From Lenisia limosa (taxonomy: Eukaryota; Protista; Breviatea), in the NCBI GenBank assembly GCA_001655205.1, contig LPNZ01010658.1, positions 1 to 33,755 of the forward strand: a stretch of 33,755 nt of DNA, given 5' to 3'. The notes beneath the pieces were generated by a model, which was not told the DNA's origin, made no database searches, and was given only the letters and a program-made list of their open reading frames with translations. How positions within the stretch are numbered: position 1 is the stretch's first letter; each line of letters begins with the position of its first letter. The position numbers and the translations under genes were made by a program. Positions 2,188 to 30,272 of this stretch are shown here, piece after piece.

Positions 2188-2413
2188 ACTAAAAGGAAAC
2201 TAGCTTGGGGACTTGGGGAAAAAGAAAAGAACAAAAGAGTATAATTACGGTACCAGGGGTGACCCACTTGAAAAGGCGAAAGCAAATGATAGATATATAG
2301 TAGATATTATATATGTTGAAAGCTGTTGTTAATACTATATAAATATGTTTCTAGCGTAATTTTTGCTTCAAAGGCCTTTCTCAGTTTTTCAGCTCTTTTT
2401 TGGCCCTTCTCAA
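2188..2413. promoter_or_regulatory. Probable bidirectional promoter and 5' UTRs between divergent genes
   Basis: Only 226 bp separate the ATG at 2187 (-) from the ATG at 2414 (+). AT-rich, with TATATAAA at 2336-2343, TATTATATAT near 2306-2314 and a direct repeat CTTGGGGA x2 at 2204-2219. Confidence 0.55.
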
Positions 2414-2473
2414 ATGAAGGGCCCTATTTGGCCTTTGGTGTTCTTGCTGCTCCTTATTTCTTATTCATATGCA
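2414..2473 (+). other. Signal peptide of the giant protein
   Basis: MKGPIWPLVFLLLLISYSYA: basic N-terminus, hydrophobic core, small residues at -3/-1, followed directly by the first CPPG repeat. Confidence 0.75.
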
Positions 2474-5400
2474 ATTAGTTGCCCTCCTGGAGAGTTTTGG
2501 GAATCTACTCTCGATGAGTGTGGCGATTGCCCTTCTGGACACTAGTAAGCTTCTCTCCGCTTTATCTATGAGCTTATATGTTCTAGTAACACTTTTTAGT
2601 TGCCTTGGAGGTCAAACAGCAGCAGTACCTTGTCCCATTGGTACAGGATCATCTGCATTGAAAGCCCAACTTAGTGACACTTGTGTGGTATGCGTTGGAT
2701 CCCATTGCAATGTTTCCTGCCTTACCGTTCACACCTTACTGGGGTTTTTTTTTGTTTTTATGATTTTTAAATGATTCTATGGAGTGACATATCTTTTATA
2801 CATTTACTATTTACCTACTGTTGCCTGTCTTTTATACACTTACTATTTACCCAGTTGCCTGTCTTTTTCTGTTCATTGTATGAAAAACTTCATAGTGGTN
2901 NNNNNNNNNNNNNNNNNNNNNNNNNNNNNNNNNNNNNNNNNNNNNNNNNNNNNNNNNNNNNNNNNNNNNNNNNNNNNNNNNNNNNNNCCCTGACACCGTG
3001 TACAGTGGGCACGTATTCAATCGCCGGCATGTCATCCTGTGATCCTTGTCCGGCAGGCTTCAGTTGTGCGTCAGTATCGGTATCCCCTGTGGCCTGTGTC
3101 AGCCCCAACTACTCCATTGAGGGCGATGAAAACTGCAACAGCTGTCCTGCTGGTTCGTACTGCCCGTCCACCAGCGAAGATAAAAAAGTGGGTTTGTGAC
3201 GGTGTATCGGCTGGTTTAACTGAGCTGGCCTTTTCATACATCTTTTTTGTTTGACCAATTCAGGCTTGTCCATCAGGGATGTACTCAGGNNNNNNNNNNA
3301 GGTTTTGTATATTTTTTAATTAATTGATTGAGCTTAAGTCAATGCTGATAGCGTTTAATTAAGTCAATGCTGATAGCGTTTAATTAAGTCAATGCTGATA
3401 ACGTTTAATTGATTGAGCTTAAGTCAATGCTGATAGCGTTTAATTGATTGAGCTTATGTCAATGCTGATAGCGTTTAATGATTGAGCTTAAGTCAATGCT
3501 GATATAGTTTAAATGAGCTTAAGTCAATGCTGATAGCGTTTAAATGATTGATCTTAAGTCAATGCTGATAGCGTTTAATTGATTGAGCTTCAGTCAATGC
3601 TGATAGCGTTAAAATGATTGAGCAGCAAGTCATTGCTGACAGCGTTTAAATGATCTCACAATACAGGCATGTCCATCGGGAATGTACTCCGTCGCCGGCT
3701 CGGTTGTTTGTTTGGACTGCCCTCCTGGGCACGAGTGCCCGACACCGTCATCGTTGCCTTCTTTCTGCAACGCAGGTACGCTTGAATTCAATTACTTCAT
3801 CAACATAACCTTAAAATGCTCTAATGGTAGCGTGCTCTATTGTTGACTTTTTTTACCAACAGTACTGGTATATTTATATTTAATTGTCACTTAGAAAGCG
3901 GTGTTCATTGAGCAAACAAATAATGGGTGATGGATATCATAGTATGTTACGAATCCAATATCTCTTCGAAGCGTGATAGTATGAACTGCTTTAGCCAGAT
4001 ATGACCTTGTTATCATATCGTATGATATCAAGGAATGTAGGTGACCAAAAGGGAAGACGCACATACTACAAAATTGACAACAAATAGGTTCATATTCTGC
4101 TGGTGGCCAGGTCATCACATGCTCCTCTTGTCCCGACGGTATGCCAAATTCTTTGCTTTTGATGACGTCACTAACCTTCCTTTTAAGGCATGTACCAAGA
4201 CTCGTCTACCATGTCCACCTGTATCTCATGCCCGGCCGGTCACTCGTGTTTGGATAAAGCGGTTGCTCCTTCGCAATGCTCTGCTGGTACTGCGTCCCCT
4301 GTGCTGGCCAGTTCCTGTCAAGCCTGTCTGCCAGGTGGGTGCCTCATGTTTTTGTGATGCCCACCATGTGAGACTATTTTATGTCGCATTATTATCCATT
4401 TTAGGCACATACAGTCTGATTGGTGCTTCGGCATGTATTGCGTGTCCGGCAGCCAAGCAATGCCCCTCTGTTTGTACGGGTGTACTACTGTAATTCTCAT
4501 ATAAAACCATCCCAGTATTGTGTAACCGATATCTACATGTATATGAAGTTTACCCTCTGTTCATGAGTTATCTGGACACTCACAACCCAGGTTAGCGCGG
4601 CTGTCGACTGTCCGATCGGAACCTACAGTGCCGGCGGCCTGCTTGCCTGCACAAGCTGCCCTAACGGCCAGGTTGTTAACGCCAATGCCGACGGATGTGA
4701 TAATTGCGCCGCCGGATTCTCCTGCCTTGCTAACGGCACCATGACTGCCTGTCCTTCGGGCCAATATTCTCTCCTTGGAGTGGACTCCTGTTCGCCTTGC
4801 CCGGCCGGAACGGAGTGTCCCAACACATCATCACGTCCGCTGCCGTGCTCCGTCGGTACGTATTCCATCGGAAGCCAGACTGCATGCACATCGTGTCCCG
4901 CCGGTAGCTCTTGTATCGACACTGCCGCACTGCCTTCCGTTATCCCTTCCGGCTACTATTCCCCTGATGGCGATGCCTTTAGCCACATCTGCCAGGCCGG
5001 ATATGCGTGTCCAGACACAGCACAACTTCCGGCGGTGTGCTCCGACGGCACATTCAGTTCGGCTGGTGCCGACTCCTGCACAGACTGTCCTTCAGGCTTT
5101 TTCTGTCCATCAGCTGACTCTCAGCCCGAGTCGTGTCCTTCTGGTTACCATTCGTTCGCCAATGCCACGATCTGTGATCTTTGTCCCGCTGGTTCTGAGT
5201 GCAGCAACGCTGCTATCGTTCCCGTGCCGTGTGTTGCGCCTAATTTCTCTCTCGATGGCGCGATCATGTGCTCCATGTGTCCTAAGGGTTTCAGTTGCGC
5301 GTCTACGTCTGTGGCACCGACGCCATGCGCGTCTGGGACCTACTCCCTAGAGAATGAGGCCGGATGCACTGACTGTCCCGTTGGAAGAGAGTGCCCACAC

Positions 5401-8400
5401 GCAACCGAACTTGGTCCTGCCTGTCAAGTCGGAACATATTCGGATAGTCTTGCCACCGCCGCATGTCTGCCATGCCCATCCGGACAGAGCTGTGCAACAG
5501 TGAGCGCCACACCCGTTGATTGTCCAGTCGGAAGCTATTCTTGGTCTGGTGTAGCCACGTGTGACCCGTGTCCTGCGGGATACGAATGTTCCGACTCTGC
5601 GCTTCCGACTATCTGTCCGCTCGGCTCATGGTCGCCGCCGTCGGCAACAGCGTGTTCTGCGTGTACACCAGGTTACGTCTGTCTGCCTGGGAGTACTTCC
5701 GCCACTCCTACTGACGCTGATTGTCCCGTCGGCTATTATTGCCCCGGACCTTCCGACAAGATTGCTTGTAGCGTTGGGACAGTTGGCACGATTGCGGGCC
5801 AAGCATCATCAGCTCTCGCCTGTTCCCCGTGTCCTGCCGGCAAAATGTGCCCAGTTTCCGGTCTGTCCGGCTCTCTTGACAGCCACATCTGTCCGGTAGG
5901 TCACTACTGTGTGGCCGGCACGGGTGCAACCGCGAGCCCCTGTGCCGCCGGAACTTACAACAATGAGCCTGGTGGAGCAAGTCCAGCTGTTTGCGACGTT
6001 TGTCCCGAAGGTTACTACTGCCCTGCCGGCTCTGCCGTTCCAATTGTCTGTCCCCAAACGTATTTCTGTCCCACCGGAAGCGGGCATTTGTCCGGTACGG
6101 AACAATGTTTGGCCGGAACGTATTCGGGCTCCGTCACTGGTCTAACTTCTTCCGGTGACTGTCAGCCCTGCCCGGCTGGCCACTATTGCCCGCTGGGCGC
6201 CCCGATGCCGCTCCCATGTTCCGCCGGCACGTACAACCCCGTCAGCAACGGACCGTCGGCTTTGTCATGTCTGTCATGCACCGCTGGTACAGCGTGTCCC
6301 TCAAGCGGACTGACCGCGCCAACCTCGGCGTGTGACGAGGGGCATTACTGCCCGGCTGGTGGGATATTGTGTTGTTATTCTGCATATGCATCCATAATTT
6401 ATACTACTATGTTCTATCAGACTTTTTTCTTCTCATATTCCCTCATCGTGTTTTTAACTTAACAGGTACGATCAATCCGAATGACAACCCCTGCGATGAA
6501 GGTTATTACGGACCCAGCACCTCTTTAGCCTCATCTACGTCCTGTCTACCATGCCCTGCTCGTGTGGCTTGTGCACAGGGAACAGGTGAGCAACTTCCAA
6601 GATATCGTGTCATTGTACTGAATATCTTCCAAGATGATATACAATAATGCCCCCCTCCCCCCAGGCGGTTTCGGTTCGGCAAGTCCGCCAAGCCCATGCG
6701 GGGCGGGTCACTACTGTTTACAAGGTACGCGGACGCCGACGCAGCGCAATTGTCCGAGAGGCACGTTCTCAGCCTCCACCAACCTGGCGTCTTCGGATGA
6801 GTGCACCCAATGCACCCCCGGGTATTATTGTTCCCCGGGGCGGAGCACCGAAACGGGCCTCTGTCAATATGGGTCGTACTGCCCGCTTGGTTGGGGGATA
6901 CGTTGCATTTAGTATGTACTATAGGAAAATGTTGTACAAATCTGGAACCACGAGAGTAACCCCTCCCCCCAGGTTCCGGTTACTCGAGTGGAGTATACTG
7001 CCCTGCAGGTACTTATATGGACGAACGCGGAGCCTATGCTGTGCATGAGTGCAAGAAATGCCCAGCTGGCAGCTATTGTCCCGAAGGTATGCTTAAGCAT
7101 GACGGACAATCTTCCCACTTATTTCTCTAACCGGCACTTCCGACCAATATCTCTAACCGGCATAGGCTCACAAGACCCGATTGAATGTCCGGAGCGGACC
7201 TTCGGCTCCACTGAGGGTCTTGGTGCATTAGCGCAGTGTCTGGACTGCCCTGCCGGTCACTATTGTACTGCCAACACTGCCGACCCGGCCGTGTGCCCAC
7301 CCGGTGGCTGGATGTTGTCATTATTATTTCCAGTTTCAGTATTTTTGATCATTGACGGTATATCTCACCAACTAGGTGAACACTCTGCCAGCCGGGCACT
7401 CAACTGCACCCAATGCCCTAGAGGCCATTATTGCCCCCACCATGCCACCTCCACGTCCGACATGGCGACGTCCTTCATCTGCGTCGCAGGACTTCTCTGT
7501 CCGCCCGGTCTCTCAGCTGAGCCGACGGGAGCCACTGTCGCGTGTCCCGTGGGCCATTACTGTCTCGAAGGTGCGGTGACCGGAACGCCCTGCCCCGCCG
7601 GCACGTACAACCCTGCCGTCCAGTCCAAAACTGAGGCTGAGTGCTCTACATGCCCCCCAGGATACTATTGTCTCGGAGGGAGCAACACTGTTTCAGGCGA
7701 GTGTGATCCGGGGTACTACTGCCCTGCCGGCTCGGATATGGCTCAAGAACAGCCGTGCCCGATAACCCGTTATAGAAACTTGCCTAAAGGGGAATCAGTT
7801 GCCGACTGTGCCAGTTGCCCTGCCGGAACTTCGTGTTCATCGCCCGGTAAGGCGGGTTTTGCGGATTTGGGTTCTTTGATCCGTTTTTTGGCTGCAAATA
7901 TTTTTTGTTCATGCTTTGATATTTGATTGACNNNNNNNNNNNNNNNNNNNNNNNNNNNNNNNNNNNNNNNNNNNNNNNNNNNNNNNNNNNNNNNNNNNNN
8001 NNNNNNNNNNNNNNNNNNNNNNNNNNNNNNNNNNNCACCGGAGTCAGTAACCCAGAGCCTTGTCCTGCTGGGTCGTACGGCAGCTCGCAAGGCCTCCGTA
8101 GTGTGGGCGAGTGCACCTATTGTCCTGGCGGAAAGTACTGTGAGGGAACAGGAATGTCGACATTCACTGGTCCGTGCCAGGCCGGGTTCTACTGTGTGGA
8201 GCGCGCTGAAACCGCAGCACCTGCGTCCTTACCGCAAGGTGGGGGGGGGGAGTCGTCTGTCATTCCTTTCATTTTCGGGTTTGGTCAATTTTTACACTCT
8301 CAACTAAATATGACCTTCATTCACGCACAACTAAACCTTCATTCACGCACAACTAAATATGACCTTCATTCACGCACAACAGGCGGTGTTTGTCCGACAG

Positions 8401-11400
8401 GAGGATATTGCCCCGAAGGTTCCGCAACTCCCGAGCCTTGTCCTGCTGGAAAGTACAACACAGTATCCGGCCGCACACAGCCGACTGACTGTATCGACTG
8501 TCCTGTTGGCCAATACTGTTCTGGAAGCAGCAATCCAGCGCCAACGGGTATTTGGGGTGATATCTCTTTCAGTTTTCGACTATTATCAAAATATCAGTGT
8601 ATATCAAGATGACTATTACCAAAATAGCAGTGTCTATCTGTGTATCAAGATGACTACTATCAAAATATCAGTGTGTACAAGATGACTACTATCACAATAT
8701 CAGTGTCTATCTTGTATCAAGATTTTTTTTTTTTTTTTCAAAGTTTTACGTTGTAGGCCCATGTCTCGCAGGCTTTTATTGCGACGGAGGGTCCAGCACT
8801 CCCATGCAGCATACCGCTCCCAACGGGACGTACACAGAAGAAGGCGACTCCAGCCCCCGACAATGCCCTGCTGGAACGTACAACCTCGATAGCGGGCAGT
8901 CAGTGTGCCCCGATTGCCCCGAGGGCTATTACTGTGATCTGCCTGGGACTAGTGTGCTCCAACAGTGTCCAGCAGGCAGCTACTGTCCGAGCGGGTCTGA
9001 TGCACCCATTCCATGTCCCGAAGGCACTTTCAGCAGCACTGCACAACTCAGCAACGTCACACAATGCAGCCCCTGCACACCAGGAAAATACTGCGACGCC
9101 GCCGGACTTCAGACCCCCACTGATGACTGTCTTGCGGGCTACTTCTGTGCCGGCGGCGATGACTCAGCCACCCCCGTCACGGTGTGCCCGGCTGGACACT
9201 ACTGCCAAGTCGGCACGCACACCCCAGAGCCTTGTCCCATCGGAACGTTCGCTGCCGCCACCGACGGCAAAGATGTTTCGCATTGCCAGCAGTGCAGTGG
9301 CGGCAAATTCTGCTCCAGTGCCGGGCTGAGCACGCCGACCGGCGACTGTGACGGCGGCTGGTATTGTTCCGGCGGCGCGTCCTCCAGCCAGCCCAATGAC
9401 GCCACCGGTGATGAGTGCACAGTCGGCCACCAGTGTCCTGCCGGCTCCGTGGCTCCGGTCGATTGTGCCGATGGAACTTACGCAGCCACCCCGGGCCTTG
9501 CCACGTGTACGCCTTGCCCAGAAGGCAACTTCTGCGAGACGCCATGGATTGCGCCCACACCATGTCCGGCTGGAAGCTATTGTACCACCAACTCCGGGCC
9601 GGATTACCCCGACTGTCCTGCCGGAACCTACAGCGCCACCGGAGGCAAGGCCAACCTTGTAGACTGCCAGGACTGCGACGCTAATAAGTACTGTGCCGGT
9701 CCGGGCAACACAGCCCCCACAGGCGACTGTGAAGCCGGCTTCGAATGTGTAGCCAAATGCGCGGACGCTCAGTGCAGCAATGCTGACGGCACCGGTGGAG
9801 CATGTCCCCAAGGGTCATTCTGTCTCGAGGGCACCCCTGCGCAGCTTTGTCCCGTCGGAACGTACGGTGCCTCCTCAGGGTATGTTGATGTGTTTAGATC
9901 TCTTAGTTTTTGGGAATTTAGTGACGCTTTAGATTAACTCTCGAGTCGGAGTGTTCCAAATGTCTAGGTGGCCGTTATTGCCCCTCCCCAGGTTGGTACC
10001 GTGCAAGGCTTAATGTGAGGGTTGGATACTATTTCGACACAAAAATTCGACGACTTTTCTTCATAAATCCACTAAAATCAGTTCAATTAGCCTCCTTTAA
10101 CACTCAATTGACACCATATTGTTCGTACCAGTAGAGATTCTTTTCTGCAGTCTGGTCTGGTTCGCGCTCTGTCCATCCAGCTTTGATCCCCTCGGGGGTC
10201 GTATGCTTGGGAAGGTTCTAAGCGTTATGATTGGGTTGTGACCGTTAATAAGTCGAATTTTTTTCTCTCACATTTACCTTACTTTTTAACACCTTACAGG
10301 TACGTTTGGGTGATTGAGCGGTTGGACTCTTCAAAGGCTGGCTCGGGCTTGTTTTTGTTTTTGTGTTTTTGTCATCTGGCTTTNNNNNNNNNNNNNNNNN
10401 NNNNNNNNNNNNNNNNNNNNNNNNNNNNNNNNNNNNNNNNNNNNNNNNNNNNNNNNNNNNNNNNNNNNNNNNNNNNNNNNNNNNNNNNNNNNNNNNNNNN
10501 NNNNNNNNNNNNNNNNNNNNNNNNNNNNNNNNNNNNNNNNNNNNNNNNNNNNNNNNNNNNNNNNNNNNNNNNNNNNNNNNNNNNNNNNNNNNNNNNGCAC
10601 TGCGGGGGCCACTACGGCCACGCCAACCGATGGTGTCACTGTGAGTTGATGGATCATATGATTCATAGTATTGTTGTTTCTGCGCAACTTCTTGAATCCA
10701 TATTGTTAATCTTCTTACTGACTCAATCAAAACGATGCTCACCTAACTAGGGGGACATTTGCCCTGCAGGCAGCTCGTGCATTGAAGGAGCTGCGGCTCC
10801 AGCCCCCTGTGCTGCCGGGTCCTACTCCTCTGCCGGCTTGGCCACATGTGAGGCGTGCCCCAAGAACTACTACTGCACCACCGGCAGCACGATGTACTTT
10901 GACAAGCCCTGTCCGACTGGCCACTACTGTCCCGAAGGCACAAAGTCGTCGTATGAATTCCCTTGTCCCGCCGGAACGTACAACACCTTTGGCCTGCAAA
11001 ACAACCCGTCGGCATGTAAGTCATGCCCGGCTGGGTCGTATTGCGGCTCCTCTGGTCTCGGGGCCGTCTCCGGGCCCTGTACAGCCGGGTACTGGTGCGC
11101 CAGTGCGGCCACCACCGCGACGCCAACCGACGGAACAACTGGCGATGAATGTGGAATCGGCGAGTTCTGTCCCGAGGGTTCCTCCGGTCCAACGCCTTGC
11201 ACGGCCGGCAGCTTCTGTGCCTCTCCTCGTCTAGGCGCCGTGACGGGACCATGCAAACAAGGGTTCTACTGTCCGACAGGGTCTACCACCGATCAGCCGA
11301 TCACAACTTGTCCTGCTGGCTCATATTGCCAGGCCGGGGCTGCCACCCCAACTCAGTGTCCTCCTGGCACTTTCTCCGTCTCTCCTGGCGCCACGTCATC

Positions 11401-20400: not shown

Positions 20401-23400
20401 GCCATGTCCATTGCCTACCTTAATTGGCAACTTTTTTTTGTCAACTTACCATATCAGGCAACTGAGGCGACTGACCTCTCCCGCCGCCAGGCTGTTGATG
20501 ATACTATCAAGGTAGGGGCTACCTAACTGTCCCTTTATGAGCCTCATTCCCCCCTCTCTTTTGACCAAAAATGGACATGCTAATACCTTCACTGCCTTCC
20601 AAAAGCGTATCAATTGGGCAGACCTTTTAGAAACACAATAAAGGGGAAGCTGAGCCTAAAGCAGTGTGTTTAACCTCCAGGAATATTTTCTTATTTTAAC
20701 TAATGGGACAGAGTTTGTCAGTCCTTTTCGTTGAAAGTTCGATTACTTTTTCACCAAATCGCTATTGTCTCAATTCTTCTCGACTTAGCACCCCACACCC
20801 CAGGTCATGAGACTAGCTGTGAATGAGGCACGCGCACGTGACATGTTCGGCCCAACCGCAATTTGGGATGTAGCGGTGGACTACAGCGCCGCACGGTCCA
20901 CTGCTGCCAAACAACTGCTTGAGGAATATGCCGGCCGGTGCGNNNNNNNNNNNNNNNNNNNNNNNNNNNNNNNNNNNNNNNNNNNNNNNNNNNNNNNNNN
21001 NNNNGTAGTGTTCTCGCGGCCGCCAAGGTTCATTGTTTAGATCTGCCACATCTGCCGGTGTTGCACAGGGGCCCGTCATCACAGCTGAAGTTGCCGCAAT
21101 GCTCGCACAAATGGTAGCTCGGAGTCCTACGAAACGGAGCGCCTTCCAGAGTTGAATTGACCATTTAGGTTGGCATGAGAGGTGCAACAGTTGAGAGAGT
21201 TGCCGCAGTGGCTGACATGCAATCGTCCAATGAGATCATGGTCCAAGAACAGAAAGCGCAGGTTGGTACCCGTGGATTGTGCTTGGCAAAATCCGACATT
21301 TTACCCTGTAGGCCCGGAATGATATGGACCGATTATTGGCGGACGAGGAGTCCACAGACCGTGAAGTCATGAAGAAGAGGCTTGATGTCAAGAAAAAGAG
21401 GGCCATGGAGAAGTTAAGGTTACAGATGAGAGAGAAACTCAAAGTGGGGGGAGGGTCTGCGTCATGCCATTTTAACCAGTCAGGAATACAGCTCATTTAA
21501 GCCTTTCTGTTCATAAGGCTCACTACACCCCCCTCCAGAACGCAAAATCCTCTAGTGCTGAAGAGATGGTGATGGCGGAGCACGAGCAGCAGTTGAATTC
21601 CTTGGAGCATGAGCTGGAAACTGCCAAGGTACAGGCCGAGCGTGGCCTAGAGAACACCAATAACGCAAGGAGANNNNNNNNNNNNNNNNNNNNNNNNNNN
21701 NNNNNNNNNNNNNNNNNNNNNNNNNNNNNNNNNNNNNNNNNNNNNNNNNNNNNNNNNNNNNNNNNNNNNNNNNNNNNNNNNNNNNNNNNNNNNNNNNNNN
21801 NTTGACCTGCTATGTATAGCAAATCGGTCAAACTTATCCAGGTCACTGTACAGATATATAAGTACTTTATCATAAGATATGTTATATAAACCAAGACTTA
21901 CAAGCCAAGAGCGTCGAGAGAGTCAGTTGCAACGACAGTATGAGGACATTGAGGCTCTCCCACAGGCGTCTTACGCTTCCCTTCCTTCAGGTATGATAAG
22001 CGATTGGCTTGAGCTCGTGTCAATCTTTATCAAAATGAGTTGTTTTTTTTTTATTATTATTATTATTCTTATTATCAATTTTTCATCTCTGCAGGTATTG
22101 ATGGGATNNNNNNNNNNNNNNNNNNNNNNNNNNNNNNNNNNNNNNNNNNNNNNNNNNNNNNNNNNNNNNNNNNNNNNNNNNNNNNNNNNNNNNNNNNNNN
22201 NNNNNNNNNNNNNNNNNNNNNNNNNNNNNNNNNNNNNNNNNNNNNNNNNNNNNNNNNNNNNNNNNNNNNNNNNNNNNNNNNNNNNNNNNNNNNNNNNNNN
22301 NNNNNNNNNNNNNNNNNNNNNNNNNNNNNNNNNNNNNNNNNNNNNNNNGCTCGTGCTGATGCGGATAAGGCTGAGGAGGAAGAGAAGCAAATCCTTCAAA
22401 GAGTGGCTGTTGTGGAGGAGGAAAAGGTGCTCCAAGCAGGTGCTGTGGAAAGCACCGAGCTCCAGACAGCCACCAACAAGCTGGAGGAGATGATTGCCCG
22501 GGCTGAAGCGGCCGCGAACCAAAACGCTGCTGATACACTTCGACGACAGGGTGGGTGCGGCTTTTATTTCGTCTCGCATTTTGTATTCTTAATAATCAAA
22601 TCCTCATTTGGCAACTATTCTGATTCGGACAGAGGCCGAGGCTCAGGAAGCCATTGCTGCGGTTGAGCGTGCACGCACCATAGCACAGGCACGCGAAGAT
22701 GCCCTTGTTGAGGAATCGCGCATCCGAGCCGAGTTACTGAGTAAAGCAATTGAAGAGGGTGAGTCGAAGTTGGCACTCAAACATCGCGCAGAGCGTGAGG
22801 CCACCATCACGGAAGTTGCTATTGAGGAAGCAGAGGCAATTGAAAAACTTCGTGAAAACCATCAGAAAGAGGTTCGTGGGGTTATGGCTGCTACCAGCAT
22901 GGAACTTCTTCCTTTGCTCACACTACAGGTCGAACAATCAGTTCAGAATGCTCAGGCCGCTATATTGGAGGAAAACACAGACGCTTCTGATGAAATCAAG
23001 GTAAGCAGGCACCAGTTATGTTGATCAAGTTAACAGGAGTATGATACCTTATAAGGAGAATGTACTTGATAGAATATATCATATTGCAAACTCAAAGAAA
23101 TATGTTCTTTTCATGGTTTCTGTCAACTCCAACACTTGTTTTTCCTGGACTGCGAGCATAAATTTCTCGCATCAACACCAGGTTGACTTACCATATTAGG
23201 AATCTCTAGCCGCCGGCGCCGCAATTACGGCTACCGCGAAGGCTGGGCTTGACCTGGCTCGGATGGAGGAGGAGACGCGGCAATCCATGTCGGCCCGTCG
23301 GGACCTAAAGTTGGGTGTCCTGAAGGTATTTGGGGATGGTGGGTATTGTTGTGAGGAATGCATAAGCTTATATGATATACTATATAGCAATGAGAAATAA

Positions 23401-26400
23401 AAAAATATGGTTGTATCTGGCCGTTATCATAAACATGACCACTCAACCTTCTTACCCTTCCCCTCAGGAAGAACAATCCTCGGAAGTTGACAGAATTCCG
23501 GACGGCGGATCAGCCACAGCCTCTGCCGCCACGCAGCCTCCCCCCAAAACAGTTGTGGACAACGTTGACGACTCCGAAGCCCAGGCCAAGGTGCGTCTTG
23601 CGATGCGAAACCGGTTTCATTGTTCAGGCTGCAGCTGAGAGGGAACTGGACGAACTGGATCGCCGTGATCGTGACAATCTGGAGCGCACTCTCAAAGGTG
23701 GGAGAGGGCCTCTCTAAGGCCTTGGTAAATGTGGGGGATAGGTAAACGTTTAATAGTGACGAACCTATTTCGAAGCTACCCTCACCAACATAGGGCTTTC
23801 TGACAGCGACCCCATGGTTGTGGCACAGCGACGATCATTGGAGAACAGACTAGCAGCGCGCAGACGGCGCAAATTGATGACGGTCCACCTTGACCATGTC
23901 AGAAACAAGGCAACCGCACTCGGTGAATCGTAAGCGGGCATCTATTATGATCCCGTGTTAGTATTCAGGAATAGCAATTGACCGATTTAGTGGCGCAAAG
24001 ACCCAGCCGAAGCTCACCCCCCGCGGCATGTCAAGCAGACGCTCCCTTGGTACCCCCATGCCTGGTGAGCACTCTATTGTTTTTGATAGGTTTACTTTGT
24101 CGAAAAAGGACGCTGTTTTTATTGATGGCCTAGGAATGGGCATGAACTCGGGCGGTAGTGCCGCAATGCTCAGTCGCGGCGGCTTAGAGTCAACTTCCTT
24201 CGGGTGGGGGCTGGCGGTTGGGATGGTTGTGTTTTTTTACTGCTTGTTTTTTGACTCTCCAGACACACCGCATCGGGTATGAACCTCAAGGCCCCCCGCA
24301 AGGCCACGGGCAAGGCCATGTCGGAAGCGGCGACTGAACTTCGGAACGAGGCCGACCTAGCCGCGTTGGCTCGGGTCACGGAGGCGTTGATTGAGGAGGA
24401 GGAGGAGCAGGAGGAGCTTGACAAGGCCATTGAGGAGCAAGAGGAGGTTGGAATGGACGATATCGCGCGCAAGATTGCCGAATCACGCGAAAGTCGCGTG
24501 GCAATCGAGAAGAAGCGGTTCACAGTGGTCATTTCCGACGCGAAACTCAGTGAATCCGAACGCGCCGCCGCACTTCAAACACACAATGACGCCCTTGCAC
24601 GCATCGAAATCGACCTCGGCGCTGAACGCCGACGCATGGAAACCGTGCTGCAGAAGAAACTCAAGGCTCGCCGCCGGGGTGAGGTGTACATCGAAACAGC
24701 CGCCGATACCGCTGAGGATATGTCCGTACGCCACGAGCGTGAGCGCGCAGACCTCATTGTAAAGTTGGACCGCGAGGATCGCGAGGATCGTGAGAACCTT
24801 GACATGGAGCTGGAGGGAGCCGACACCGCCACCGTGGACCGACGGAACAGCACTCTCGCACAACGCATGGCTGGACGTCGCGACCGCAGGCTCGCCGCAC
24901 TCAACCGGTGGGGGGGGGTGTCACTCTACCAACTGCATTTCTCATATTATACTGTATCACTTCACTTCGGACAGAAAAAAACCCGAGATAAATCTTTGAT
25001 TTGGTTTCCGGGTTTTTTTCGTCGGAGTGAAGCACTTTTATTACAAAGCTGTCACCCATTGGCGCTGACCCTTCAGGCAACAGGCGAACGAGCGCTCGTC
25101 CAACACAGGTCCCGTCCTGGCTGAGGAGTCTGAGCCAGAAGAGAGCGACGGAAGCGACGAGGACGATACTTTGGAGGAGGTCAAGCTCAAGGAAAGACAG
25201 AAGGAAATGATGAGTCAGATGAAAGACCGCCATGCAGATGAGACCAGGGCCTTAGAGTATAAGGAGAAGAAGCAAGAGGAGGTGATGCGGATGAAGATGG
25301 AGGAGGCTGAGCGTGAGCGCGAAGAAAAATTGCGTCGCGAACGTGAGGAGAAGCTAGCCGTTACAGCGCAGTCACGCAACGACATCAGTGACGCTGAGCG
25401 CCGTGCACAGTTTGCGCAACATGAGCGTGACATGGCGGAGCTGGAGACGAAAATGGCTGCTGATCGCGACCGAATGGAACAGAAACTGCGGCAAGAGATG
25501 GAAGACATGAAGAAGAAGTTCCGTGAGGAGCAGATCTCACGCCAGGATGAAGAAAAGCAAAGGGAAATGGCAGAGCAGGAGAGCGAGCGGGCGGCAGCGC
25601 GTGAAAAGGCCAACAGACAACGTGACGTCGACGCCATTTCCGAGGCGAAGGAGAACCTTGGCTCGGATCAAACGGTTCAGGCCATCCAGCTCATCCTCCA
25701 TCGTCGCCATACTCGCGAGACCCGCGACCTCAACAAACAGCTCAAGAAGGACAAGGCGTTCAAGATCAAGGTGCGTTGTGCTCGTATATTTGGTCTTCAT
25801 TAATATCTTCTATTATCTTTGGTCTTCTATTACATCAAAAAAAAACGTAAAATCCGAGTGATACCCCCCCCCCCCCNNNNNNNNNNNNNNNNNNNNNNNN
25901 NNNNNNNNNNNNNNNNNNNNNNNNNNNNNNNNNNNNNNNNNNNNNNNGAAGATCACACAAAAGCAGAGTGGTGAGCTGGCGGAGCTGATGAAACAGCGCA
26001 CAAGCCTCTCACACGAGGACTTCAACACTGCCCAGGCGGACCTCCTATCCAAACAACAGAGCGAGCTGACTGCCCTGGACTCGCGACACCTTGGCGAGAG
26101 GAGAGAGGTTCGTTATTTGTTTGAGGACCAATAAATATTGTTGAGAATATTTCATTTCTCTTCTCATTTGTGTTGGTTTGTTCATTTCTCTTCTCATTTG
26201 TGTTGGTTTGNNNNNNNNNNNNNNNNNNNNNNNNNNNNNNNNNNNNNNNNNNNNNNNNNNNNNNNNNNNNNNNNNNNNNNNNNNNNNNNNNNNNNNNNNN
26301 NNNNNNNNNNNNNNNNNNNNNNNNNNNNNNNNNNNNNNNNNNNNNNNNNNNNNNNNNNNNNNNNNNNNNNNNNNNNNNNNNNNNNNNNNNNNNNNNNNNN

Positions 26401-29400
26401 NNNNNNNNNNNNNNNNNNNNNNNNNNNNNNNNNNNNNNNNNNNNNNNNNNNNNNNNNNNNNNNNNNNNNNNNNNNNNNNNNNAGGAGAAATACGTTCTGA
26501 AGAACAGGCACTCGTTTGAGATGTCAGCCGTTCACGAGAGCAGTGATCCTGAGAAGGTGGGGCTGGTCAGCTGAGGCCACAAGCGTTGTGTTTTTCTGAA
26601 CTCTCGCGCATGTGGGTTGTTGATGTTTCTTAATAGTTTTGTTTCAATAATTCACTCCCCCTAGGTGCTGAAGCAAGAGAGAGACGAAGTGGAGAGGGAT
26701 ATGAAGGAGCTGCAGTCTCGCCTTGACGCTGAGAGAAACGAGAAACTAGCGAGTGTCGAGGAAGAAAAGGCCAAGATTGAGGCTGAACACCGTAAGAGAC
26801 TCGAGGAGGAGCTTGAGGAGTTTGAGCGTCAAGCAGAGGAGGAGCGGAAGAAGGAGCAGGAGAGGCTTGAGGAGGCTATGAGGGTTAGGAAGGAGCAGAA
26901 GGAGGCGCTGGAGGCTGAGAGGCTGAAGAAGAAGGAGGAGGAAGTGTCCCTTGCCCGGAGTCTTGGCGACGCCGACCGCATTGCGATCATCGAACAGGCG
27001 CAGAAGCAGCGCGATGACTTCGAAAGCAAAATGGAAGAGGACTACAACAGGCAACAGGCCAAGTTTGCGGAGCGTCTGACTGAGAGAAGGGCTAAGGTCA
27101 GGGCTAAGAAGCTTGCGGAAGCCCAAGAGAAGCTGAAACAGGAGGAGGAAGAAGCAAAGAAGAAACTTGCCGCCGAGGCAGCAGAGAAGCTGGAGCATGA
27201 GGCGCGGAACTTTGAAGAGGACGCTCGGATGTTGGAAGAGAAAATGCGGGCTGAAGCACGCCAAATTGCTCTCAAGGTGAGCCTTTTCATCTACTTCTGA
27301 AAAATCATTATTATCCTGATTAACACAAGGGACCATATTAAAGCCTAACCACCCCAGGCCAAACGTGAGGCTGAGGAGGCTCTGTTGAAGGAGGCGCAGG
27401 AGGCCGAGGCAGAGGTCCTGGCCGAAATGCAGGCAGCTGGAGGCGGACTGGGCGGACCTGGGATGTCCAATGAAGAGTGGTTTGAGTTACTCAAGAACTC
27501 TCCCCTGTTTGCAAAGCTGGAAGTGATTGAGCAAAAGGTTGGGGCGGGGGGTGAAGCTGTTTTTGCACGAATGCTGATATTATATTTTGAAGACCAATAT
27601 GTGATAGTGTTTTCATCATTACTATGTCAGGTTGGTGATTTGATGGACGGGTCCGGACCGGAGGGAGAGACCCTAGTCAATGCGGTTAGAGAAGCGGCGA
27701 GCCAGCTCAAGACCGTCGGCCCAATGCCCACGCAGAACATTGCCCAGCAGGCTGGTATGTGCGATATTTCATACAGCTCGTCCATCTTAGGTACTATTCC
27801 AATCACCCCCTCCCCCCAGTCGTTGAGAAGATCGACTTGGACCCGCGTGAACACGAGTTCAGCGTGGGCGGTCCGCTGAAGACTCTGAGCATCGATGAGT
27901 TGAGTCCAATGGAATGTGTTGTGTCCCGGTTCGGACAGTATCTAGCCGGTTGGGGGAGGGGGCCGTCTTGAAGCCAACATCACCAGGAGTGTTAGTTGCC
28001 ATTCTTGACACCATCAGATATGCTCTCGGCACGCATTAGCACCCCCGCGGTTACTGTGCAGCTTGCAAGCAACCTGCCGTCCAACGACTTCGAATCAACG
28101 TACAAACACTCCTTCCACTGCTCCCTTGACAATGTACGTACTGCCTTAACCATTTATCACCCCCTCACCGCCGCCGCCGCCAGGCCCCAATTTATATCAC
28201 ACCCAGATCATCATAACACCTAGAAACTCCAATTCTTGTCCCTTCATAGACCTTAGAGCCGCTCAGCTTCTCAAGCTGTTCCACAATTTACATCACTCCC
28301 CCCCAGGCCACAATTTACATCCGACGTGAGCGCGCATCACCAGTTGGCGAGTTTGCCGCGGTCCTGGTCCATGCGCTTTGCCACATTTCAGCCAAAGGAC
28401 AGCCATACAGCCATTTCCAGTTGGTCATTGCTAACATCGATGACAACTCTGTATCATACCTAGGCAAAGTACTAACGTGATCCAGACGATCGCTGTTGAG
28501 GGCCACCGTGGCTGTGGGCGAAGATCTTTTCCTTGCGCGTGTGCGTGGTCCTGGTGGCGCCCTTGTTTCTGAAGCAGCTAAGGATGCTGTCAAGGTTTGT
28601 CCTCGTGCAATTCACCATATTAGGCAAGTATCGCAGCTTCGTCCGGAGCAGACCGGCAGGCTCTTGTCAGCGACCTTGTTGACAGCCATGTATGGGCCGC
28701 TGAGACCGGCACGTTCACGTCTCGCAATATGGCCGCACGCATGGAGGTATGAGATTAGTGATTCTGTAATCCCCCAGCAATACATGGGCAACCAGGACGC
28801 TGGTCATCTTTCCACGTTCCTTGCGAAGCTTGGCTCTGAAATCGGTCGTGACCCCCAGGCTGACTCAGCTGTCGATCAGAGGTGCGCTGTCGTATTTGGC
28901 CATAAATATGTGTTGCTATCAATGTGTATTGGCCATACATATGCTACCAATGCTCATCACGGTGATTATTTCATTAGACTGAGTAACCTCTCGTCCGAAG
29001 GCGATCGTGTCGACTCTTTCTCCGAGTATCTTCAGAGGGAAATCAAGCATCTCGAAACGAATGTATGCGTAAGGTGTTGGGTGAACGAATGTATGCGCAA
29101 TGGGTGAAGTGTTTAAGTTTTTTTGAACCCGAAAATATATTTTGAGTAGACTTTACGCCAGTATTCTCGAAATTTCCTTCGTTTTACCCCCCCCCCCCAG
29201 GNNNNNNNNNNNNNNNNNNNNNNNNNNNNNNNNNNNNNNNNNNNNNNNNNNNNNNNNNNNNNNNNNNNNNNNTTGAAATCACGTCGCGCGTGCAAGCCTC
29301 TCGCGAGAGCCTCGAGGAAATCGGAACTGCCGACTCATTGTCATCCGGTGAATCCCGGGCCGACCTCATCGGATCCCTCCGACGGTCCGAACATGCCCAG

Positions 29401-29705
29401 GTGGGGCGTTGCTTACAATTTTTCATTTTACTCAACCCTCGCACCCCCCAATTTTCGCTGGAGTGATGGGATGTGTTGTTATCAACCCTTGCGTGTTGTC
29501 AGCCAACAGAGTAGATTCTGGGTTGGCCAACAGATTCTGGGTTTTTTGTTTTGTTTCACACCGTCACCTTATGATGCAGAAAAAGGCCGAACGCGAAAAG
29601 TTGCGCGTTGCCCACACGCTCAAGCAAGCCTCTGAGGAACTGGAGTCAAAGAGGGGCCTCCAAGCCGCCCACGCCGCCCGTACTGGCAATGAATTCTCTG
29701 TTTAG
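2414..29705 (+). CDS. Giant type I membrane protein with Cys-rich GCC2/GCC3 (ephrin-receptor-like) repeats and a long coiled-coil cytoplasmic tail; multi-exon, roughly 6,000 aa
   Basis: Phase-consistent GT-AG exons: 2414-2544, 2600-2687, ~2988-3187, 3667-3775, 4088-4138, 4188-4334, 4405-4469, 4591-6358, 6466-6585, 6665-6889, 6973-7086, 7166-7303, 7376-7846, ~8036-8238, 8383-8547, 8757-9879, 9933-9991, ~10596-10640, 10751-11888, 11965-12525, 12640-12876, 12955-13009, 13124-14888 (internal gap), 15027-15124, 15322-15399, 15482-15899, 16049-16126, 16209-17690, 17775-17864, 17946-18040. Many further small exons follow through 27820-27948, 28018-28133, 28307-28419, 28486-28594 to a last exon ending NEFSV-TAG at 29705. 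No intervening stop, start or signal peptide needing a second gene was seen, but N gaps (esp. 19046-22348, 25877-26482) hide some exons. Confidence 0.85.
2792..2867. repeat. Intronic tandem duplication, ~35 bp x2
   Basis: TCTTTTATACAYTTACTATTTACCYA(CT)GTTGCCTG repeated twice plus a partial copy. Confidence 0.8.
3321..3655. repeat. Intronic minisatellite, ~35 bp unit x ~10
   Basis: Consensus TAATTGATTGAGCTTAAGTCAATGCTGATAGCGTT. Two copies are truncated to 25 bp and the last copy is degenerate. Units are contiguous with no unique spacers. Confidence 0.95.
8301..8382. repeat. Intronic tandem repeat, 27 bp x3, ending at the acceptor
   Basis: CAACTAAATATGACCTTCATTCACGCA x3 (middle copy has a 6-nt deletion), then CAACAG acceptor. 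Confidence 0.9.
8578..8723. repeat. Intronic tandem repeat, alternating 32-33 and 40-41 bp units x4
   Basis: GACTAYTAYCAMAATAKCAGTGT...CAAGAT units alternate short-long-short-long, followed by a T run. Confidence 0.9.
15121..15184. repeat. 29 bp duplication spanning a 5' splice site
   Basis: CAAG|GTGGGAAKAAGCTTCTATGATATCA x2. Confidence 0.9.
15482..16408 (+). other. Non-repeat juxtamembrane extracellular module (possible cupredoxin-like beta sandwich)
   Basis: Spliced sequence ...GRRDV...IPNPIVCLIEGEGLVVSL...HHPVYLKDSLLNDNEGFDSGAFRQL...IATFDSAGTYVFGSASDNTQQIIVSV...SC. The alternating strand pattern and F-x-x-x-GTYxF resemble cupredoxin folds (inference). Confidence 0.5.
15981..16038. repeat. 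Intronic repeat of a branch-point-like unit x3
   Basis: CATTTTCTAAC(AG)(T)nG repeated three times upstream of the acceptor at 16048. Confidence 0.8.
16409..16474 (+). other. Single transmembrane helix
   Basis: WLLIIAALMFMFFLSLCSFSVL (22 aa) followed by the basic RWLRQR (positive-inside rule). No other long hydrophobic segment was seen in the model. Confidence 0.85.
17232..18340 (+). other. Cytoplasmic beta-hairpin-like repeat region (D/H-P-x-S/T-G motifs)
   Basis: Recurring motifs: HPMTGRVVPI, DHSSGQAVPI, DPQSRGPVPL, HPLSGEPTII, DGSTSK, DPSSGYPVA. Confidence 0.5.
18579..18642. repeat. 21 bp x3 intronic repeat ending at the acceptor
   Basis: TCTGCYTWTCTCACMCGTGYR x3. Only the last copy ends in CAG. 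Confidence 0.9.
18774..18830. repeat. ~11 bp x5 intronic repeat
   Basis: GAGGGYTTAYC-like units. Confidence 0.75.
26151..26210. repeat. 30 bp intronic tandem repeat running into an assembly gap
   Basis: TTCATTTCTCTTCTCATTTGTGTTGGTTTG x2 exact, then N gap 26211-26482. Confidence 0.9.
27820..28594 (+). other. C-terminal globular domain with zincin-like HxxxH motif (HALCH)
   Basis: Spliced: ...LSPMECVVSRFGQYLADML...VTVQLASNLP...YKHSFHCSLDNATIYIRRERASPVGEFAAVLVHALCHISAKG...FQRSLLRATVAVGEDLFLAR. HALCH lies at 28370-28384. Confidence 0.55.
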
Positions 29706-30011
29706 TTTTGTTTGAGGGGGGGGGGGTAGCAATACAGTAGTCAAGTCTGACTCTTTAGATGTCCTCTCTACCAATGAGGTACTGTTTCGTTTTCGGTGAC
29801 TATTTCTTAAGTATTTCTTAGCTTTTCTTACAATTTTGTTTCTTACAATTTTGTTATATATTTCGATTCCCTTTCACATGAGTGTAAGTAGAACACAGAA
29901 CCCTCAGCTCTTCCAGTCACAAAACGAAGGATGCTGGAATGGGTGGAAAATAATTCACAGATCACCTTTGGATCTTTCCGTGATCTTTCGGTCTTCTGTG
30001 TGACGGGAAGG

Positions 30012-30043
30012 AAAAAAAATCCATCAGCGAGACTCGAACCCAC
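30012..30043 (-). other. Isolated tRNA T-arm/B-box-like element with T8 tail (not a complete tRNA)
   Basis: Minus strand GTGGGTTCGAGTCTCGCTGATGGATTTTTTTT: B-box GGTTCGAGTC, 5-bp T-stem with wobble pairs, then a T run. No D arm, anticodon arm or matching 5' acceptor strand upstream. Confidence 0.3.
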
Positions 30044-30272
30044 TATCAAATGTCTAAAACCACTTTTTCATTGCTTTTTTTGGACGTTTGGACGAGGACA
30101 TGAGGTGTTATGATGTTGTTAAGTATATATTATATATACAATGATCAGATAATGATATAAGATATATCCAACAATGCCAAGAATATGCAACTCTCTGCAG
30201 TCTACCCATCAGTCTCCATAAAACTGGAGTTCTACCAGTGTATACATTAGTTTTCAAGAAGTTAGACTCATC

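What the first reader, a model, noticed from the sequence alone, without database searches (positions are those of the whole stretch)
2414..29705. ~6,000-aa single-pass receptor-like protein with giant domains on both sides of the membrane
Seen: signal peptide, at least ~3,300 aa of ectodomain (sum of visible exons), one TM helix, then ~13 kb of genomic sequence coding hairpin repeats, a very long coiled coil and a globular C-terminus. There is no kinase or other standard signalling domain. Inference: a rigid disulfide rod outside and a coiled-coil tether inside suggest a mechanosensor, adhesin or organelle-docking tether. From memory, similar uncharacterised architectures exist in some animals, oomycetes and ciliates, but I cannot verify that here; if true it would be an ancient, unstudied eukaryotic family.
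Basis: partly seen in the sequence, partly recalled or inferred. Interest (0 to 1): 0.78.

Follow-up and report, generated by a model that had tools for sequence, protein, structure and literature searches.

The report
Giant two-sided membrane tether protein
This is one very large gene for a single-pass membrane protein with a long cysteine-rich rod outside the cell and a long charged helix ending in a protease-like but apparently inactive domain inside, and it belongs to an old, widespread eukaryotic family that nobody has studied.

Summary
The + strand at 2568-29705 carries a signal peptide and about 3,000 visible residues of Ephrin_rec_like cysteine repeats. These are followed by a conserved membrane-proximal module and one TM helix (16412-16474). 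Inside the cell come a conserved juxtamembrane helix, beta-hairpin repeats, a highly charged helical spacer and a globular C-terminus.

Assembly gaps prevent reading it as one frame. Two gaps cut exons, and 18.4-22.3 kb is largely unreadable.

The one-gene reading is nevertheless well supported:
- A paralog in the same genome carries the same order of parts in a single 4,105-codon open frame, collinear with the window from 15.5 to 27.5 kb.
- Single polypeptides of 4,000-7,800 aa with the same architecture occur in ancyromonads, CRuMs, metamonads, a cryptophyte, an ichthyosporean and many marine invertebrates.
- Short versions occur in non-mammalian vertebrates.

Every named member is "uncharacterized". 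No Pfam family, solved structure or paper covers the core modules.

The C-terminal domain models as a minimal zincin fold (Wss1/minigluzincin-like, Z about 8-9). It has an invariant H-x3-H but never the catalytic Glu.

The function is inferred, not shown: a transmembrane spacer or tether. The family is undescribed; this locus is an ordinary, gappy member of it.

The parts
2568..2615 (+). Predicted signal peptide (MSLYVLVTLFSCLGGQ), followed at 2622 by the first Cys repeat (AVPCPIGTGSS)
   Evidence: Translation, coordinates. Relatives also start with an N-terminal hydrophobic segment. The choice of start codon is inferred.
2622..15178 (+). Cysteine-rich ectodomain exons (Ephrin_rec_like / GCC2-GCC3 type repeats). 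Main coding stretches: 2990-3196, 3640-3825, 4570-6438, 6664-6909, 7159-7335, 7357-7923, 8037-8228, 8352-8579, 8828-9892, 10751-11938, 11958-12527, 12651-12893, 13101-14333, 14411-14908, 14990-15121. Interrupted by introns and by gaps at 7932-8035, 12528-12630 and 14335-14409.
   Evidence: about 3,000 aa at 8-13% Cys, about 90 CxxGxY motifs. (PF07699 in 7 exon frames: 25.6, 25.0 and 29.8 bits against a cut-off of 23.1, the others just below). (14411-14887 is 42-44% identical to the membrane-proximal Cys module of Fabomonas and Chromosphaera giants).
15479..16408 (+). Conserved Cys-poor membrane-proximal ecto-module (motif HHPVYLKDSLLNDNEGFDSGG at 15842-15904), split by an intron at about 15908-16070
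   Evidence: The same motif precedes the TM helix in the paralog, the protist giants and the short vertebrate members. No Pfam family.
16412..16474 (+). Single transmembrane helix (LLIIAALMFMFFLSLCSFSVL), followed by basic RWLRQR
   Evidence: In the AF2 model it is a helix at residues 115-143 with pLDDT above 90. Most full-length relatives examined have exactly one internal TM segment.
16763..17251 (+). Conserved juxtamembrane helical module (motif LENFSVKTLFDKLEDQTLHVASQL at 16763-16834). The model gives a 124-residue helix plus a 31-residue helix, after a roughly 90-residue disordered linker.
   Evidence: This is the most conserved stretch in the 1.84-billion-protein search (query residues 229-300). 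Model (pLDDT 85-91). No Pfam family, no PDB sequence match, no PDB fold match.
17288..18363 (+). Beta-hairpin repeats of the type (D/H)PxTGxxVP(I/V)xG, across exons 16067-17713, about 17760-18000 and 18253-18471. Gap at 18107-18178.
   Evidence: paired short strands at residues 408-495, pLDDT 80-90. (collinear with paralog repeats 2432-2564). The same repeats occur in eel and protist members.
18472..22348 (+). Gappy, low-GC stretch (5 internal gaps plus the gap at 22108-22348) that should hold the first roughly 700 aa of the helical spacer. Only weak collinear matches at 21315-21440 and 21578-21673. A dispersed repeat of about 60 bases lies at about 18767-18833.
   Evidence: Exon content here is not resolved.
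22349..27297 (+). Highly charged alpha-helical spacer exons: 22349-22490, 22596-23021, 23439-23714 (uncertain), 24255-24908, 25069-25800, 25949-26131, 26665-27297. Part heptad-like, part ER/K-like.
   Evidence: Collinear with paralog residues 3194-3872. Relatives have 40-55% E+K+R+Q over 1,000-1,700 residues at the same position.
27349..29104 (+). C-terminal globular domain in at least 5 exons (27349-27876 in part, 27690-27968, 27996-28220, 28250-28477, 28481-29104). Zincin-like fold, with HALCH at 28370-28384 in place of HExxH.
   Evidence: An HMM built from six relatives hits these exons collinearly. The relatives' domain models as helix, three strands, HxxxH helix, helix with pLDDT above 90. 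Fold matches to Wss1, minigluzincins, YbeY and SPRTN. Motif census.
29275..29705 (+). Probable terminal helical exon(s) and stop codon (29703-29705). Preceded by the gap at 29202-29272.
   Evidence: Relatives end in a terminal helical or coiled segment of about 150 aa after the globular domain. Exon borders are inferred.

Best explanation
SHOWN. The window holds one intron-rich gene for a type-I, single-pass membrane protein of roughly 5,600-6,000 aa. It belongs to a conserved, uncharacterised eukaryotic family.

The family has a fixed core: a membrane-proximal ecto-module, one TM helix, a juxtamembrane helical module, and a C-terminal zincin-fold domain with H-x3-H but no catalytic Glu, followed by a short terminal helix.

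It also has two parts of very variable length. One is an extracellular rod of Ephrin_rec_like cysteine repeats, from 0 to about 7,500 aa. The other is a cytoplasmic array of beta-hairpin repeats plus a charged alpha-helical spacer, from about 100 to about 2,500 aa.

INFERRED.
- The protein works as a transmembrane spacer or tether. The disulfide-stiffened rod would hold a distal contact site roughly 100-200 nm from the surface.
- The helical spacer would hold the C-terminal domain a comparable distance inside the cell.
- There the C-terminal domain, a pseudo-protease, would bind a protein partner (cortical cytoskeleton or an organelle) rather than cleave it.
- The juxtamembrane helices probably pair the chains.
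- Mechanical or positional coupling across the membrane, not enzymatic signalling, would be the output.
For: One gene:
- Paralog G000:C10397 has ecto repeats, TM, juxtamembrane motif, hairpins and more than 1,500 aa of charged helix in one 4,105-codon open frame.
- That paralog is collinear with the window at 15539-25740. It matches weakly at 21315-21673 and again at the 27349 exon.
- Paralog C8518 has the juxtamembrane module and the C-terminal motif on one strand 11 kb apart.
- A Trinity transcript of Fabomonas encodes 7,499 aa with the same order of parts.

Family:
- 167 hits at E<=1e-3 in 1.84 billion representatives.
- Most giants examined have about 10-12% Cys ectodomains, one internal TM segment and an EKRQ-rich tail.
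- Sources are Fabomonas, Chromosphaera, Diphylleia, Hanusia, Barthelona, Kipferlia, crinoids, a hemichordate, a sea urchin, a sea star, an annelid, amphioxus, molluscs, a brachiopod, fishes, a caecilian and an amphisbaenian.
- Short vertebrate members keep only the core. This is why I read the rod and the helix as spacers.

C-terminal domain:
- Conserved at 30-40% identity between protists and animals.
- Confident AF2 core.
- Zincins dominate both fold searches: Wss1 Z 8.8 over 108 residues, abylysin 8.1, YbeY-like 8.0, SPRTN 7.0.
- H[A/T/S/C]xxH is kept in every giant or long member aligned through the motif, with never a Glu after the first His.

No catalytic or signalling Pfam domain in any cytoplasmic part.
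Against: - No transcript, localisation or binding data exist for any member, so the function is anatomy-based inference.
- The window copy cannot be read through. Two gaps cut exons, and 18.4-22.3 kb is mostly unreadable.
- The fold matches (Z 7-9, Foldseek E 0.05-2) lie in the range that the tool says unrelated models can reach.
- The strict conservation of H-x3-H plus a downstream Asp is also compatible with a real metal site and even with catalysis. YbeY uses an H-x3-H motif without Glu (my knowledge).
- My helix classification (heptad-like versus ER/K) is a crude heuristic.
- The length estimates in nm are extrapolations from general knowledge, not measurements.
Confidence: 0.5

Rival explanations
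1. Signalling receptor with an active cytoplasmic metallohydrolase. The H-x3-H...D motif binds zinc, and the C-terminal domain cleaves itself or a substrate when the ectodomain is engaged. BlaR1-type sensors, or a YbeY-like hydrolase, would be the model.
For: H-x3-H and a downstream Asp are conserved across protist and invertebrate members. BlaR1 and YbeY-like chains appear among the fold matches. Conservation this strong suggests a liganded site.
Against: The general-base Glu of HExxH is absent in every member. One vertebrate subgroup has lost one or both His residues yet keeps the rest of the domain. There is no sequence-level match to any peptidase family.
Confidence: 0.15
2. Surface-coat or cilium/flagellum-associated fibril. 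The rod is a structural hair or glycocalyx element, and the cytoplasmic part merely anchors it to the cortex or axoneme.
For: Rod length varies enormously between lineages while the anchor is constant. As far as I know, the protist lineages found are mostly flagellated; that is my knowledge, not tested here.
Against: A simple anchor does not need 1,500-2,500 aa of cytoplasmic helix plus a conserved terminal domain. Vertebrate members have almost no rod.
Confidence: 0.2
3. Two or more separate genes: an ecto/TM gene ending near 18.4 kb and a helical protein gene starting near 21.3-22.3 kb, joined only by eye or by scaffolding.
For: 18.4-22.3 kb is low in GC, full of gaps and has almost no detectable coding signal. 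There is no transcript evidence for this locus.
Against: The same parts occur in the same order in single open frames or single polypeptides, in a paralog and in more than 20 other species. Weak collinear matches do occur at 21315-21673.
Confidence: 0.07
4. Decaying copy (pseudogene) of the family, the functional copies being the paralogs.
For: The genome holds several paralogs. The middle of this copy is unreadable. A stop codon (28478-28480) separates two same-frame C-terminal open frames.
Against: All long exons are open and keep the family motifs. The stop lies just after a TACTAAC branch-point-like sequence and before an AG, as expected inside an intron. The unreadable part is explained by assembly gaps.
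Confidence: 0.07

Closest known systems
Ephrin_rec_like (PF07699, GCC2/GCC3) repeat proteins: the Eph receptor cysteine-rich region, SVEP1, SCUBE and ELAPOR-type proteins, and protist cysteine-rich surface proteins
   Same: The ectodomain is built from the same kind of disulfide-rich module of about 40-50 aa. The domain is old in eukaryotes and occurs in adhesion and complement proteins (PMC6993872).
   Different: There is no ephrin-binding domain, fibronectin, kinase or SAM domain. The repeat number (dozens to more than 100) and the whole cytoplasmic cassette have no counterpart in those proteins.
Minimal zincins: Wss1/WLM and SPRTN, minigluzincins (abylysin, jannalysin, selecase), YbeY
   Same: Predicted fold of the C-terminal core: backing helix, three-stranded sheet, a helix carrying H-x3-H, and a following helix. 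Wss1 5xbn Z 8.8 with rmsd 3.0 over 108 residues, abylysin Z 8.1, 1oz9 Z 8.0.
   Different: No sequence similarity is detectable. The catalytic Glu is never present. The domain sits at the end of a giant membrane protein.
BlaR1/MecR1-type sensors (membrane receptor with a cytoplasmic zincin domain)
   Same: An extracellular sensor part, a membrane anchor and a cytoplasmic zincin-fold domain in one chain. BlaR1 appears among the weak Foldseek rows.
   Different: BlaR1 is bacterial, multi-pass and small, and has an intact HExxH. Here there is one TM helix, no Glu, and more than 1,500 aa between the membrane and the domain.
Giant spacer and tether proteins: golgins and nesprins (long cytoplasmic rods anchored by one TM helix), usherin/ADGRV1 (giant ectodomains), ER/K single alpha-helices of myosins
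   Same: The working principle I propose: long stiff elements that set a distance between a membrane and a binding site. This rests on my knowledge of those systems.
   Different: There is no homology. Those proteins are giant on one side of the membrane only, whereas this family is giant on both.

Membership tests
Ephrin_rec_like (PF07699) repeat-containing proteins | Match to the Pfam model at or above the curated cut-off (23.1 bits) | tested here: met
   25.6, 25.0 and 29.8 bits in exon frames 4567-6459, 10751-12157 and 13038-14333. Four more frames score 16.6-22 bits. Relatives P0006 and P0017 score 45.4 and 28.6 bits.
Eph receptor tyrosine kinases | Ephrin-binding domain, fibronectin III repeats, cytoplasmic tyrosine kinase and SAM domain | tested here: not met
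   None of these Pfam families was found in any exon frame or in the relatives' full cytoplasmic parts.
Zincin metallopeptidases (HExxH) | HExxH motif with the catalytic Glu | tested here: not met
   The window has HALCH (28370-28384). Every giant or long member aligned through the motif has H[A/T/S/C]xxH.
Zincin metallopeptidases (HExxH) | Zincin fold: backing helix, beta-sheet, active-site helix, C-terminal helix | tested here: inconclusive
   Confident AF2 core. The top non-helical VIA matches and most Foldseek rows are zincins, but Z is 7-9 and E is 0.05-2, in the range the tools flag as possibly non-specific. The model is of a relative (L015), not of the window's split domain.
Zincin metallopeptidases (HExxH) | Bound zinc with a third protein ligand | not testable with these tools
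   Candidate ligands (a conserved Asp 8-9 residues after the second His, and Glu of the REF motif) are seen in the alignment. Metal binding needs experiment.
The undescribed family defined here (Cys-rod / pseudo-zincin tether proteins) | Membrane-proximal ecto-module with the (H)YPVY.KD.L.N.N..FD.G.F motif directly before a single TM helix | tested here: met
   Window 15842-15904 and 16412-16474. The same is seen in the paralog, the protist giants and the vertebrate members.
The undescribed family defined here (Cys-rod / pseudo-zincin tether proteins) | Juxtamembrane helical motif LE.F.V.T(L/F)(Y/F)D.LE.Q.....QL | tested here: met
   Window 16763-16834. This is the best-conserved stretch across 167 hits.
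The undescribed family defined here (Cys-rod / pseudo-zincin tether proteins) | C-terminal domain NAFRNS.YYD...LF.R..RL...G.F.LVLVH..(A/S)HI...DD...F.REFY......DLFFAR | tested here: met
   The family HMM hits window exons 27349, 27690, 27996, 28250 and 28481 in order (E 4e-7 to 0.05 per exon). The window copy has an insertion of about 11 residues after HALCHIS, shared with paralog C1557.
The undescribed family defined here (Cys-rod / pseudo-zincin tether proteins) | All parts on one polypeptide | tested here: inconclusive
   Shown for the paralog and for other species. For the window copy it is inferred from collinearity only, because of the gaps.

The most novel reading that the evidence does not exclude
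A family dating back to the last eukaryotic common ancestor, or close to it, of 'two-sided molecular rulers'. A conserved transmembrane core ends in a metal-binding pseudo-zincin head, and lineage-specific spacers on both sides of the membrane set the distance between an extracellular contact and a cytoplasmic structure. That would be a new class of mechanical or positional coupling device. It is kept in protists, marine invertebrates and non-mammalian vertebrates, and no mammalian member turned up among the members whose source I could look up.
Probability: 0.3. Interest if true: 0.8.

Novelty: categorically new. Interest (0 to 1): 0.62.

Why it matters
If the reading is right, eukaryotes from metamonads to fishes share a giant membrane protein whose three core modules have no Pfam model, no solved structure and no paper. 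Its two enormous arms behave as length-adjustable spacers. That would give cell biologists a new, testable candidate for how cells couple the outside to the cortex or organelles over hundreds of nanometres. It would also give protein scientists a deeply conserved zincin-fold pseudoenzyme.

Tractable members exist in sea urchin, sea star, amphioxus and fishes, including short versions, so experiments are feasible.

The novelty belongs to the family. Its sequences already sit in public databases as 'uncharacterized protein'. This particular locus is a gappy, ordinary member with at least three paralogs in the same genome.

Tried and rejected
- Pfam on all major cytoplasmic exon frames and on relatives found nothing beyond PF07699.
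- PDB sequence searches with exons and with a family profile found nothing meaningful.
- ESM Atlas gave no usable lead. The best hit was an unnamed chordate cluster at 0.85.
- Foldseek on the TM / juxtamembrane / hairpin model gave no match. The hairpin array has no identified structural relative.
- A word search with the Ala-rich C-terminal domain of L015 was swamped by low-complexity candidates and returned one hit. A word search with the Diphylleia domain added only two proteins.
- Literature searches on the repeat, the architecture and 'lost in mammals' found no description of the family. One pseudoenzyme paper (Jhc1) proved unrelated.
- A strict heptad scan found almost no canonical coiled coil, which led to the mixed heptad/ER-K description.
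- I looked for the 21-28-base introns reported elsewhere in this assembly. The junctions inspected here look like ordinary GT..AG introns of tens to a few hundred bases.
I could not verify either and leave the organism open.
Every exon was used by reference on its own. The C-terminal fold therefore comes from an intronless relative (L015), not from the window.
- Nothing suggested a human contig.

Full report
**What the window is**

The window is contig C10658 of a 49-Mb, 11,727-contig eukaryotic assembly. Exons run at about 55% GC and introns at about 38%. The junctions I inspected look like ordinary GT..AG introns of tens to a few hundred bases. Three of them have a C-rich tract just before the AG.

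I did not take any of it for human.

**Gaps first**

Of the six gaps listed with the finding:
- 2900-2987, 3290-3299 and 10384-10596 lie in intron-like sequence.
- 7932-8035 has an exon beginning directly at its right edge.
- 12528-12630 and 14335-14409 have repeat-coding sequence on both sides.

The last two cut exons, and the nominal gap lengths do not keep frame. Gap lengths are estimates, so continuity there is unknown.

Ten more gaps follow between 18107 and 29272. Several sit on poly-C runs that I take for the C-rich tract preceding 3' splice sites. The stretch at 18.4-22.3 kb (about 36-43% GC, with five internal gaps and a sixth at its downstream end) is the weak point of the whole model.

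**The observation**

All the described parts are present on the + strand.
- A signal-peptide-like start lies at 2568-2615.
- About 3,000 residues of stop-free, 10-11% Cys sequence with about 90 CxxGxY motifs lie between 2595 and 15121. This includes a 631-codon open frame.
- Seven exon frames hit PF07699 Ephrin_rec_like, three of them above the curated cut-off.
- A Cys-poor membrane-proximal module follows at 15479-16408.
- One TM helix lies at 16412-16474.

An AF2 model of exon 16067-17713, built with 28 relatives, gives these elements in order:
- the TM helix, with pLDDT above 90;
- a disordered linker of about 90 residues;
- a 124-residue helix plus a 31-residue helix, starting at the motif LENFSVKTLFDKLEDQTLHVASQL;
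- a run of short beta-hairpins, with pLDDT 80-90.

The hairpin repeats, (D/H)PxTGxxVP, continue in the next two exons. Exons from 22349 to 27297 are 40-55% E/K/R/Q. By a crude scan they are partly heptad-like and partly ER/K, that is single-alpha-helix-like. 'Very long coiled coil' should therefore be read as 'very long charged helix'.

Exons at 27349-29104 encode a globular domain. The frame ends at 29703-29705. No cytoplasmic exon has a Pfam family.

**One gene or several**

The best evidence comes from the same genome.
- Paralog C10397 carries ecto repeats, the membrane-proximal module, TM, juxtamembrane motif, hairpins and more than 1,500 aa of charged helix in a single 4,105-codon open frame.
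- That frame aligns collinearly with the window at 15539-15904, 16208-17866, 18268-18363, weakly at 21315-21673, then at 22668-22892, 24429-24908 and 25075-25740.
- The paralog's next open frame matches the window exon at 27349.
- A third paralog, C8518, has the juxtamembrane module and the C-terminal motif on one strand 11 kb apart.

Outside this genome, the full HMMER scan of 1.84 billion representatives found 167 proteins at E<=1e-3. The long ones are single chains of 3,000-7,800 aa. They have an N-terminal hydrophobic segment, up to 7,500 aa at 10-12% Cys, in most cases exactly one internal TM segment, and then 1,500-2,700 aa that become EKRQ-rich and end in a less charged domain. One of them is a Trinity transcript of Fabomonas tropica (7,499 aa), which is direct mRNA evidence for the architecture in another lineage.

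I put the split-gene rival at about 0.07.

**The family**

Members whose source could be read:
- Protists: Fabomonas (Ancyromonadida), Diphylleia (CRuMs), Kipferlia and Barthelona (Metamonada), Hanusia (Cryptista), Chromosphaera (Ichthyosporea).
- Invertebrates: crinoids (Anneissia, Antedon), a hemichordate (Glandiceps), a sea urchin (Diadema), a sea star (Asterias), an annelid (Owenia), amphioxus, molluscs (Elysia, Dreissena) and a brachiopod (Lingula).
- Vertebrates: eels, bowfin, several teleosts, an electric ray, a caecilian and an amphisbaenian.

Every name is 'uncharacterized' or 'hypothetical'. I saw no oomycete or ciliate, but most hits are unnamed environmental sequences, so this is not evidence of absence.

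The vertebrate members are short (about 550-1,750 aa). They keep the membrane-proximal module, TM, juxtamembrane motif and C-terminal domain, with little or no rod and a short helix. This is the key anatomical fact: the core is constant, and the two giant parts are variable spacers.

**The C-terminal domain**

It is 30-40% identical between Fabomonas, Chromosphaera and a crinoid. An HMM of it hits five window exons in order.

The window's copy is split by introns, so I folded the same domain from an intronless environmental relative (L015:11132-12169) with 17 homologs. The core (residues about 70-215) has pLDDT above 90. Its topology is helix, three strands, a helix bearing HALAH, then another helix.

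Foldseek gave only weak rows (E 0.05-2). Most of the best were zincins: jannalysin, selecase, abylysin, IrrE, BlaR1 and Wss1. The Foldseek-independent search put these chains on top for this region:
- Wss1, Z 8.8 with rmsd 3.0 over 108 residues;
- abylysin, Z 8.1;
- the YbeY-like 1oz9, Z 8.0;
- S. pombe Wss1, Z 7.8;
- SPRTN, Z 7.0.

These Z values are in the range the tool warns can be non-specific. I call the fold 'zincin-like, probable', not proven.

The motif census is clear. H[A/T/S/C]xxH is kept in every giant or long member aligned through the motif. There is never a Glu after the first His. A conserved Asp lies 8-9 residues downstream, and the sequence DLFFAR follows. One short vertebrate subgroup has lost one or both His residues.

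The window has VLVHALCHI (HALCH at 28370-28384), followed by an insertion of about 11 residues shared with paralog C1557. The standard zincin mechanism is therefore excluded. Metal binding is possible, and a binding (pseudoenzyme) role is the most economical reading.

**Mechanism (inferred)**

I propose a transmembrane spacer or tether. The assumptions are general knowledge, not measurements:
- Cysteine-rich modules of this kind add about 2-3 nm each.
- An alpha-helix rises 0.15 nm per residue.

On these assumptions, both the rod and the helical spacer could each span on the order of 100-200 nm. The juxtamembrane helices probably pair the chains. The C-terminal pseudo-zincin would dock a cytoplasmic partner.

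Rivals are an active hydrolase sensor (0.15), a surface-coat or cilium-associated fibril anchor (0.2), separate genes (0.07) and a decaying copy (0.07).

**Comparison with what is known**

The ectodomain repeat is a known, ancient eukaryotic module of unknown function, found in adhesion and complement proteins (PMC6993872). The Eph-receptor membership test fails: there is no ligand-binding, FN3, kinase or SAM domain.

Zincin membership fails on the defining HExxH, while the fold resemblance stands.

No Pfam model, PDB sequence relative or paper covers the membrane-proximal module, the juxtamembrane module, the hairpin repeat or the C-terminal domain.

I therefore rate the family as undescribed. 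Three caveats apply: its sequences are already public as uncharacterised proteins, this locus is one of at least three or four paralogs, and the function is untested.

**Earlier notes of the scan**

- A note naming the organism Lenisia limosa (s1-194051) and one suspecting a second organism in the assembly (s1-201495) could not be verified. The introns inspected in this gene are of ordinary size, unlike the 21-28-base introns those notes describe.

Noticed in passing
G000:C10397 (L007+L008), 5433-17747 versus window 8800-27300: The paralog encodes the last 4,105 codons seen on its contig in one uninterrupted exon. The window copy has many introns over the equivalent region. The paralog still has introns upstream (exons at 238-723, 2678-3235, 4739-5314). 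This could reflect massive intron loss or partial retro-copying in one copy, or intron gain in the other.
   Followed up: partly
window 6630-6645, 6960-6973, 17775-17785, and gap edges at 18107, 25877, 29202: Three inspected 3' splice sites are preceded by a run of C (CCCCCCAG). Several assembly gaps start exactly on a poly-C run, as if sequencing or assembly fails on this tract.
   Followed up: partly
window 18767-18833: A short element of about 55-65 bases, with at least 20 copies at 83-94% identity on other contigs of the genome. Some copies are in tandem (for example C2620, C6210).
   Followed up: partly
window 2792-2867, 3334-3654, 8301-8380, 8578-8723, 15967-16038, 18569-18641, 26151-26210: Many introns of this gene carry short tandem duplications or minisatellites with periods of 21-41 bases. 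The largest has 7.9 copies of a 35-base unit, at 3384-3654.
   Followed up: no
window 28478-28480: A single in-frame stop separates two same-frame C-terminal open frames. It lies 3 bases after a TACTAAC branch-point-like sequence and 5 bases before an AG, so it is probably intronic. I could not place the 5' splice site so that the frame is kept.
   Followed up: partly
window 1-2400 and 29900-33755: The flanks are AT-rich with only short open frames. None of six flanking frames tested has a Pfam family. The lysozyme gene that another note places head-to-head upstream was not seen in the one upstream frame I scanned (1687-2025, minus strand).
   Followed up: partly
proteins P0081, P0086, P0093, P0068 versus P0067, P0050, P0014, P0049: Vertebrates appear to have two subgroups of the family. 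One keeps H-x3-H in the C-terminal domain. The other (short teleost, bowfin and caecilian proteins) has lost one or both His residues.
   Followed up: no
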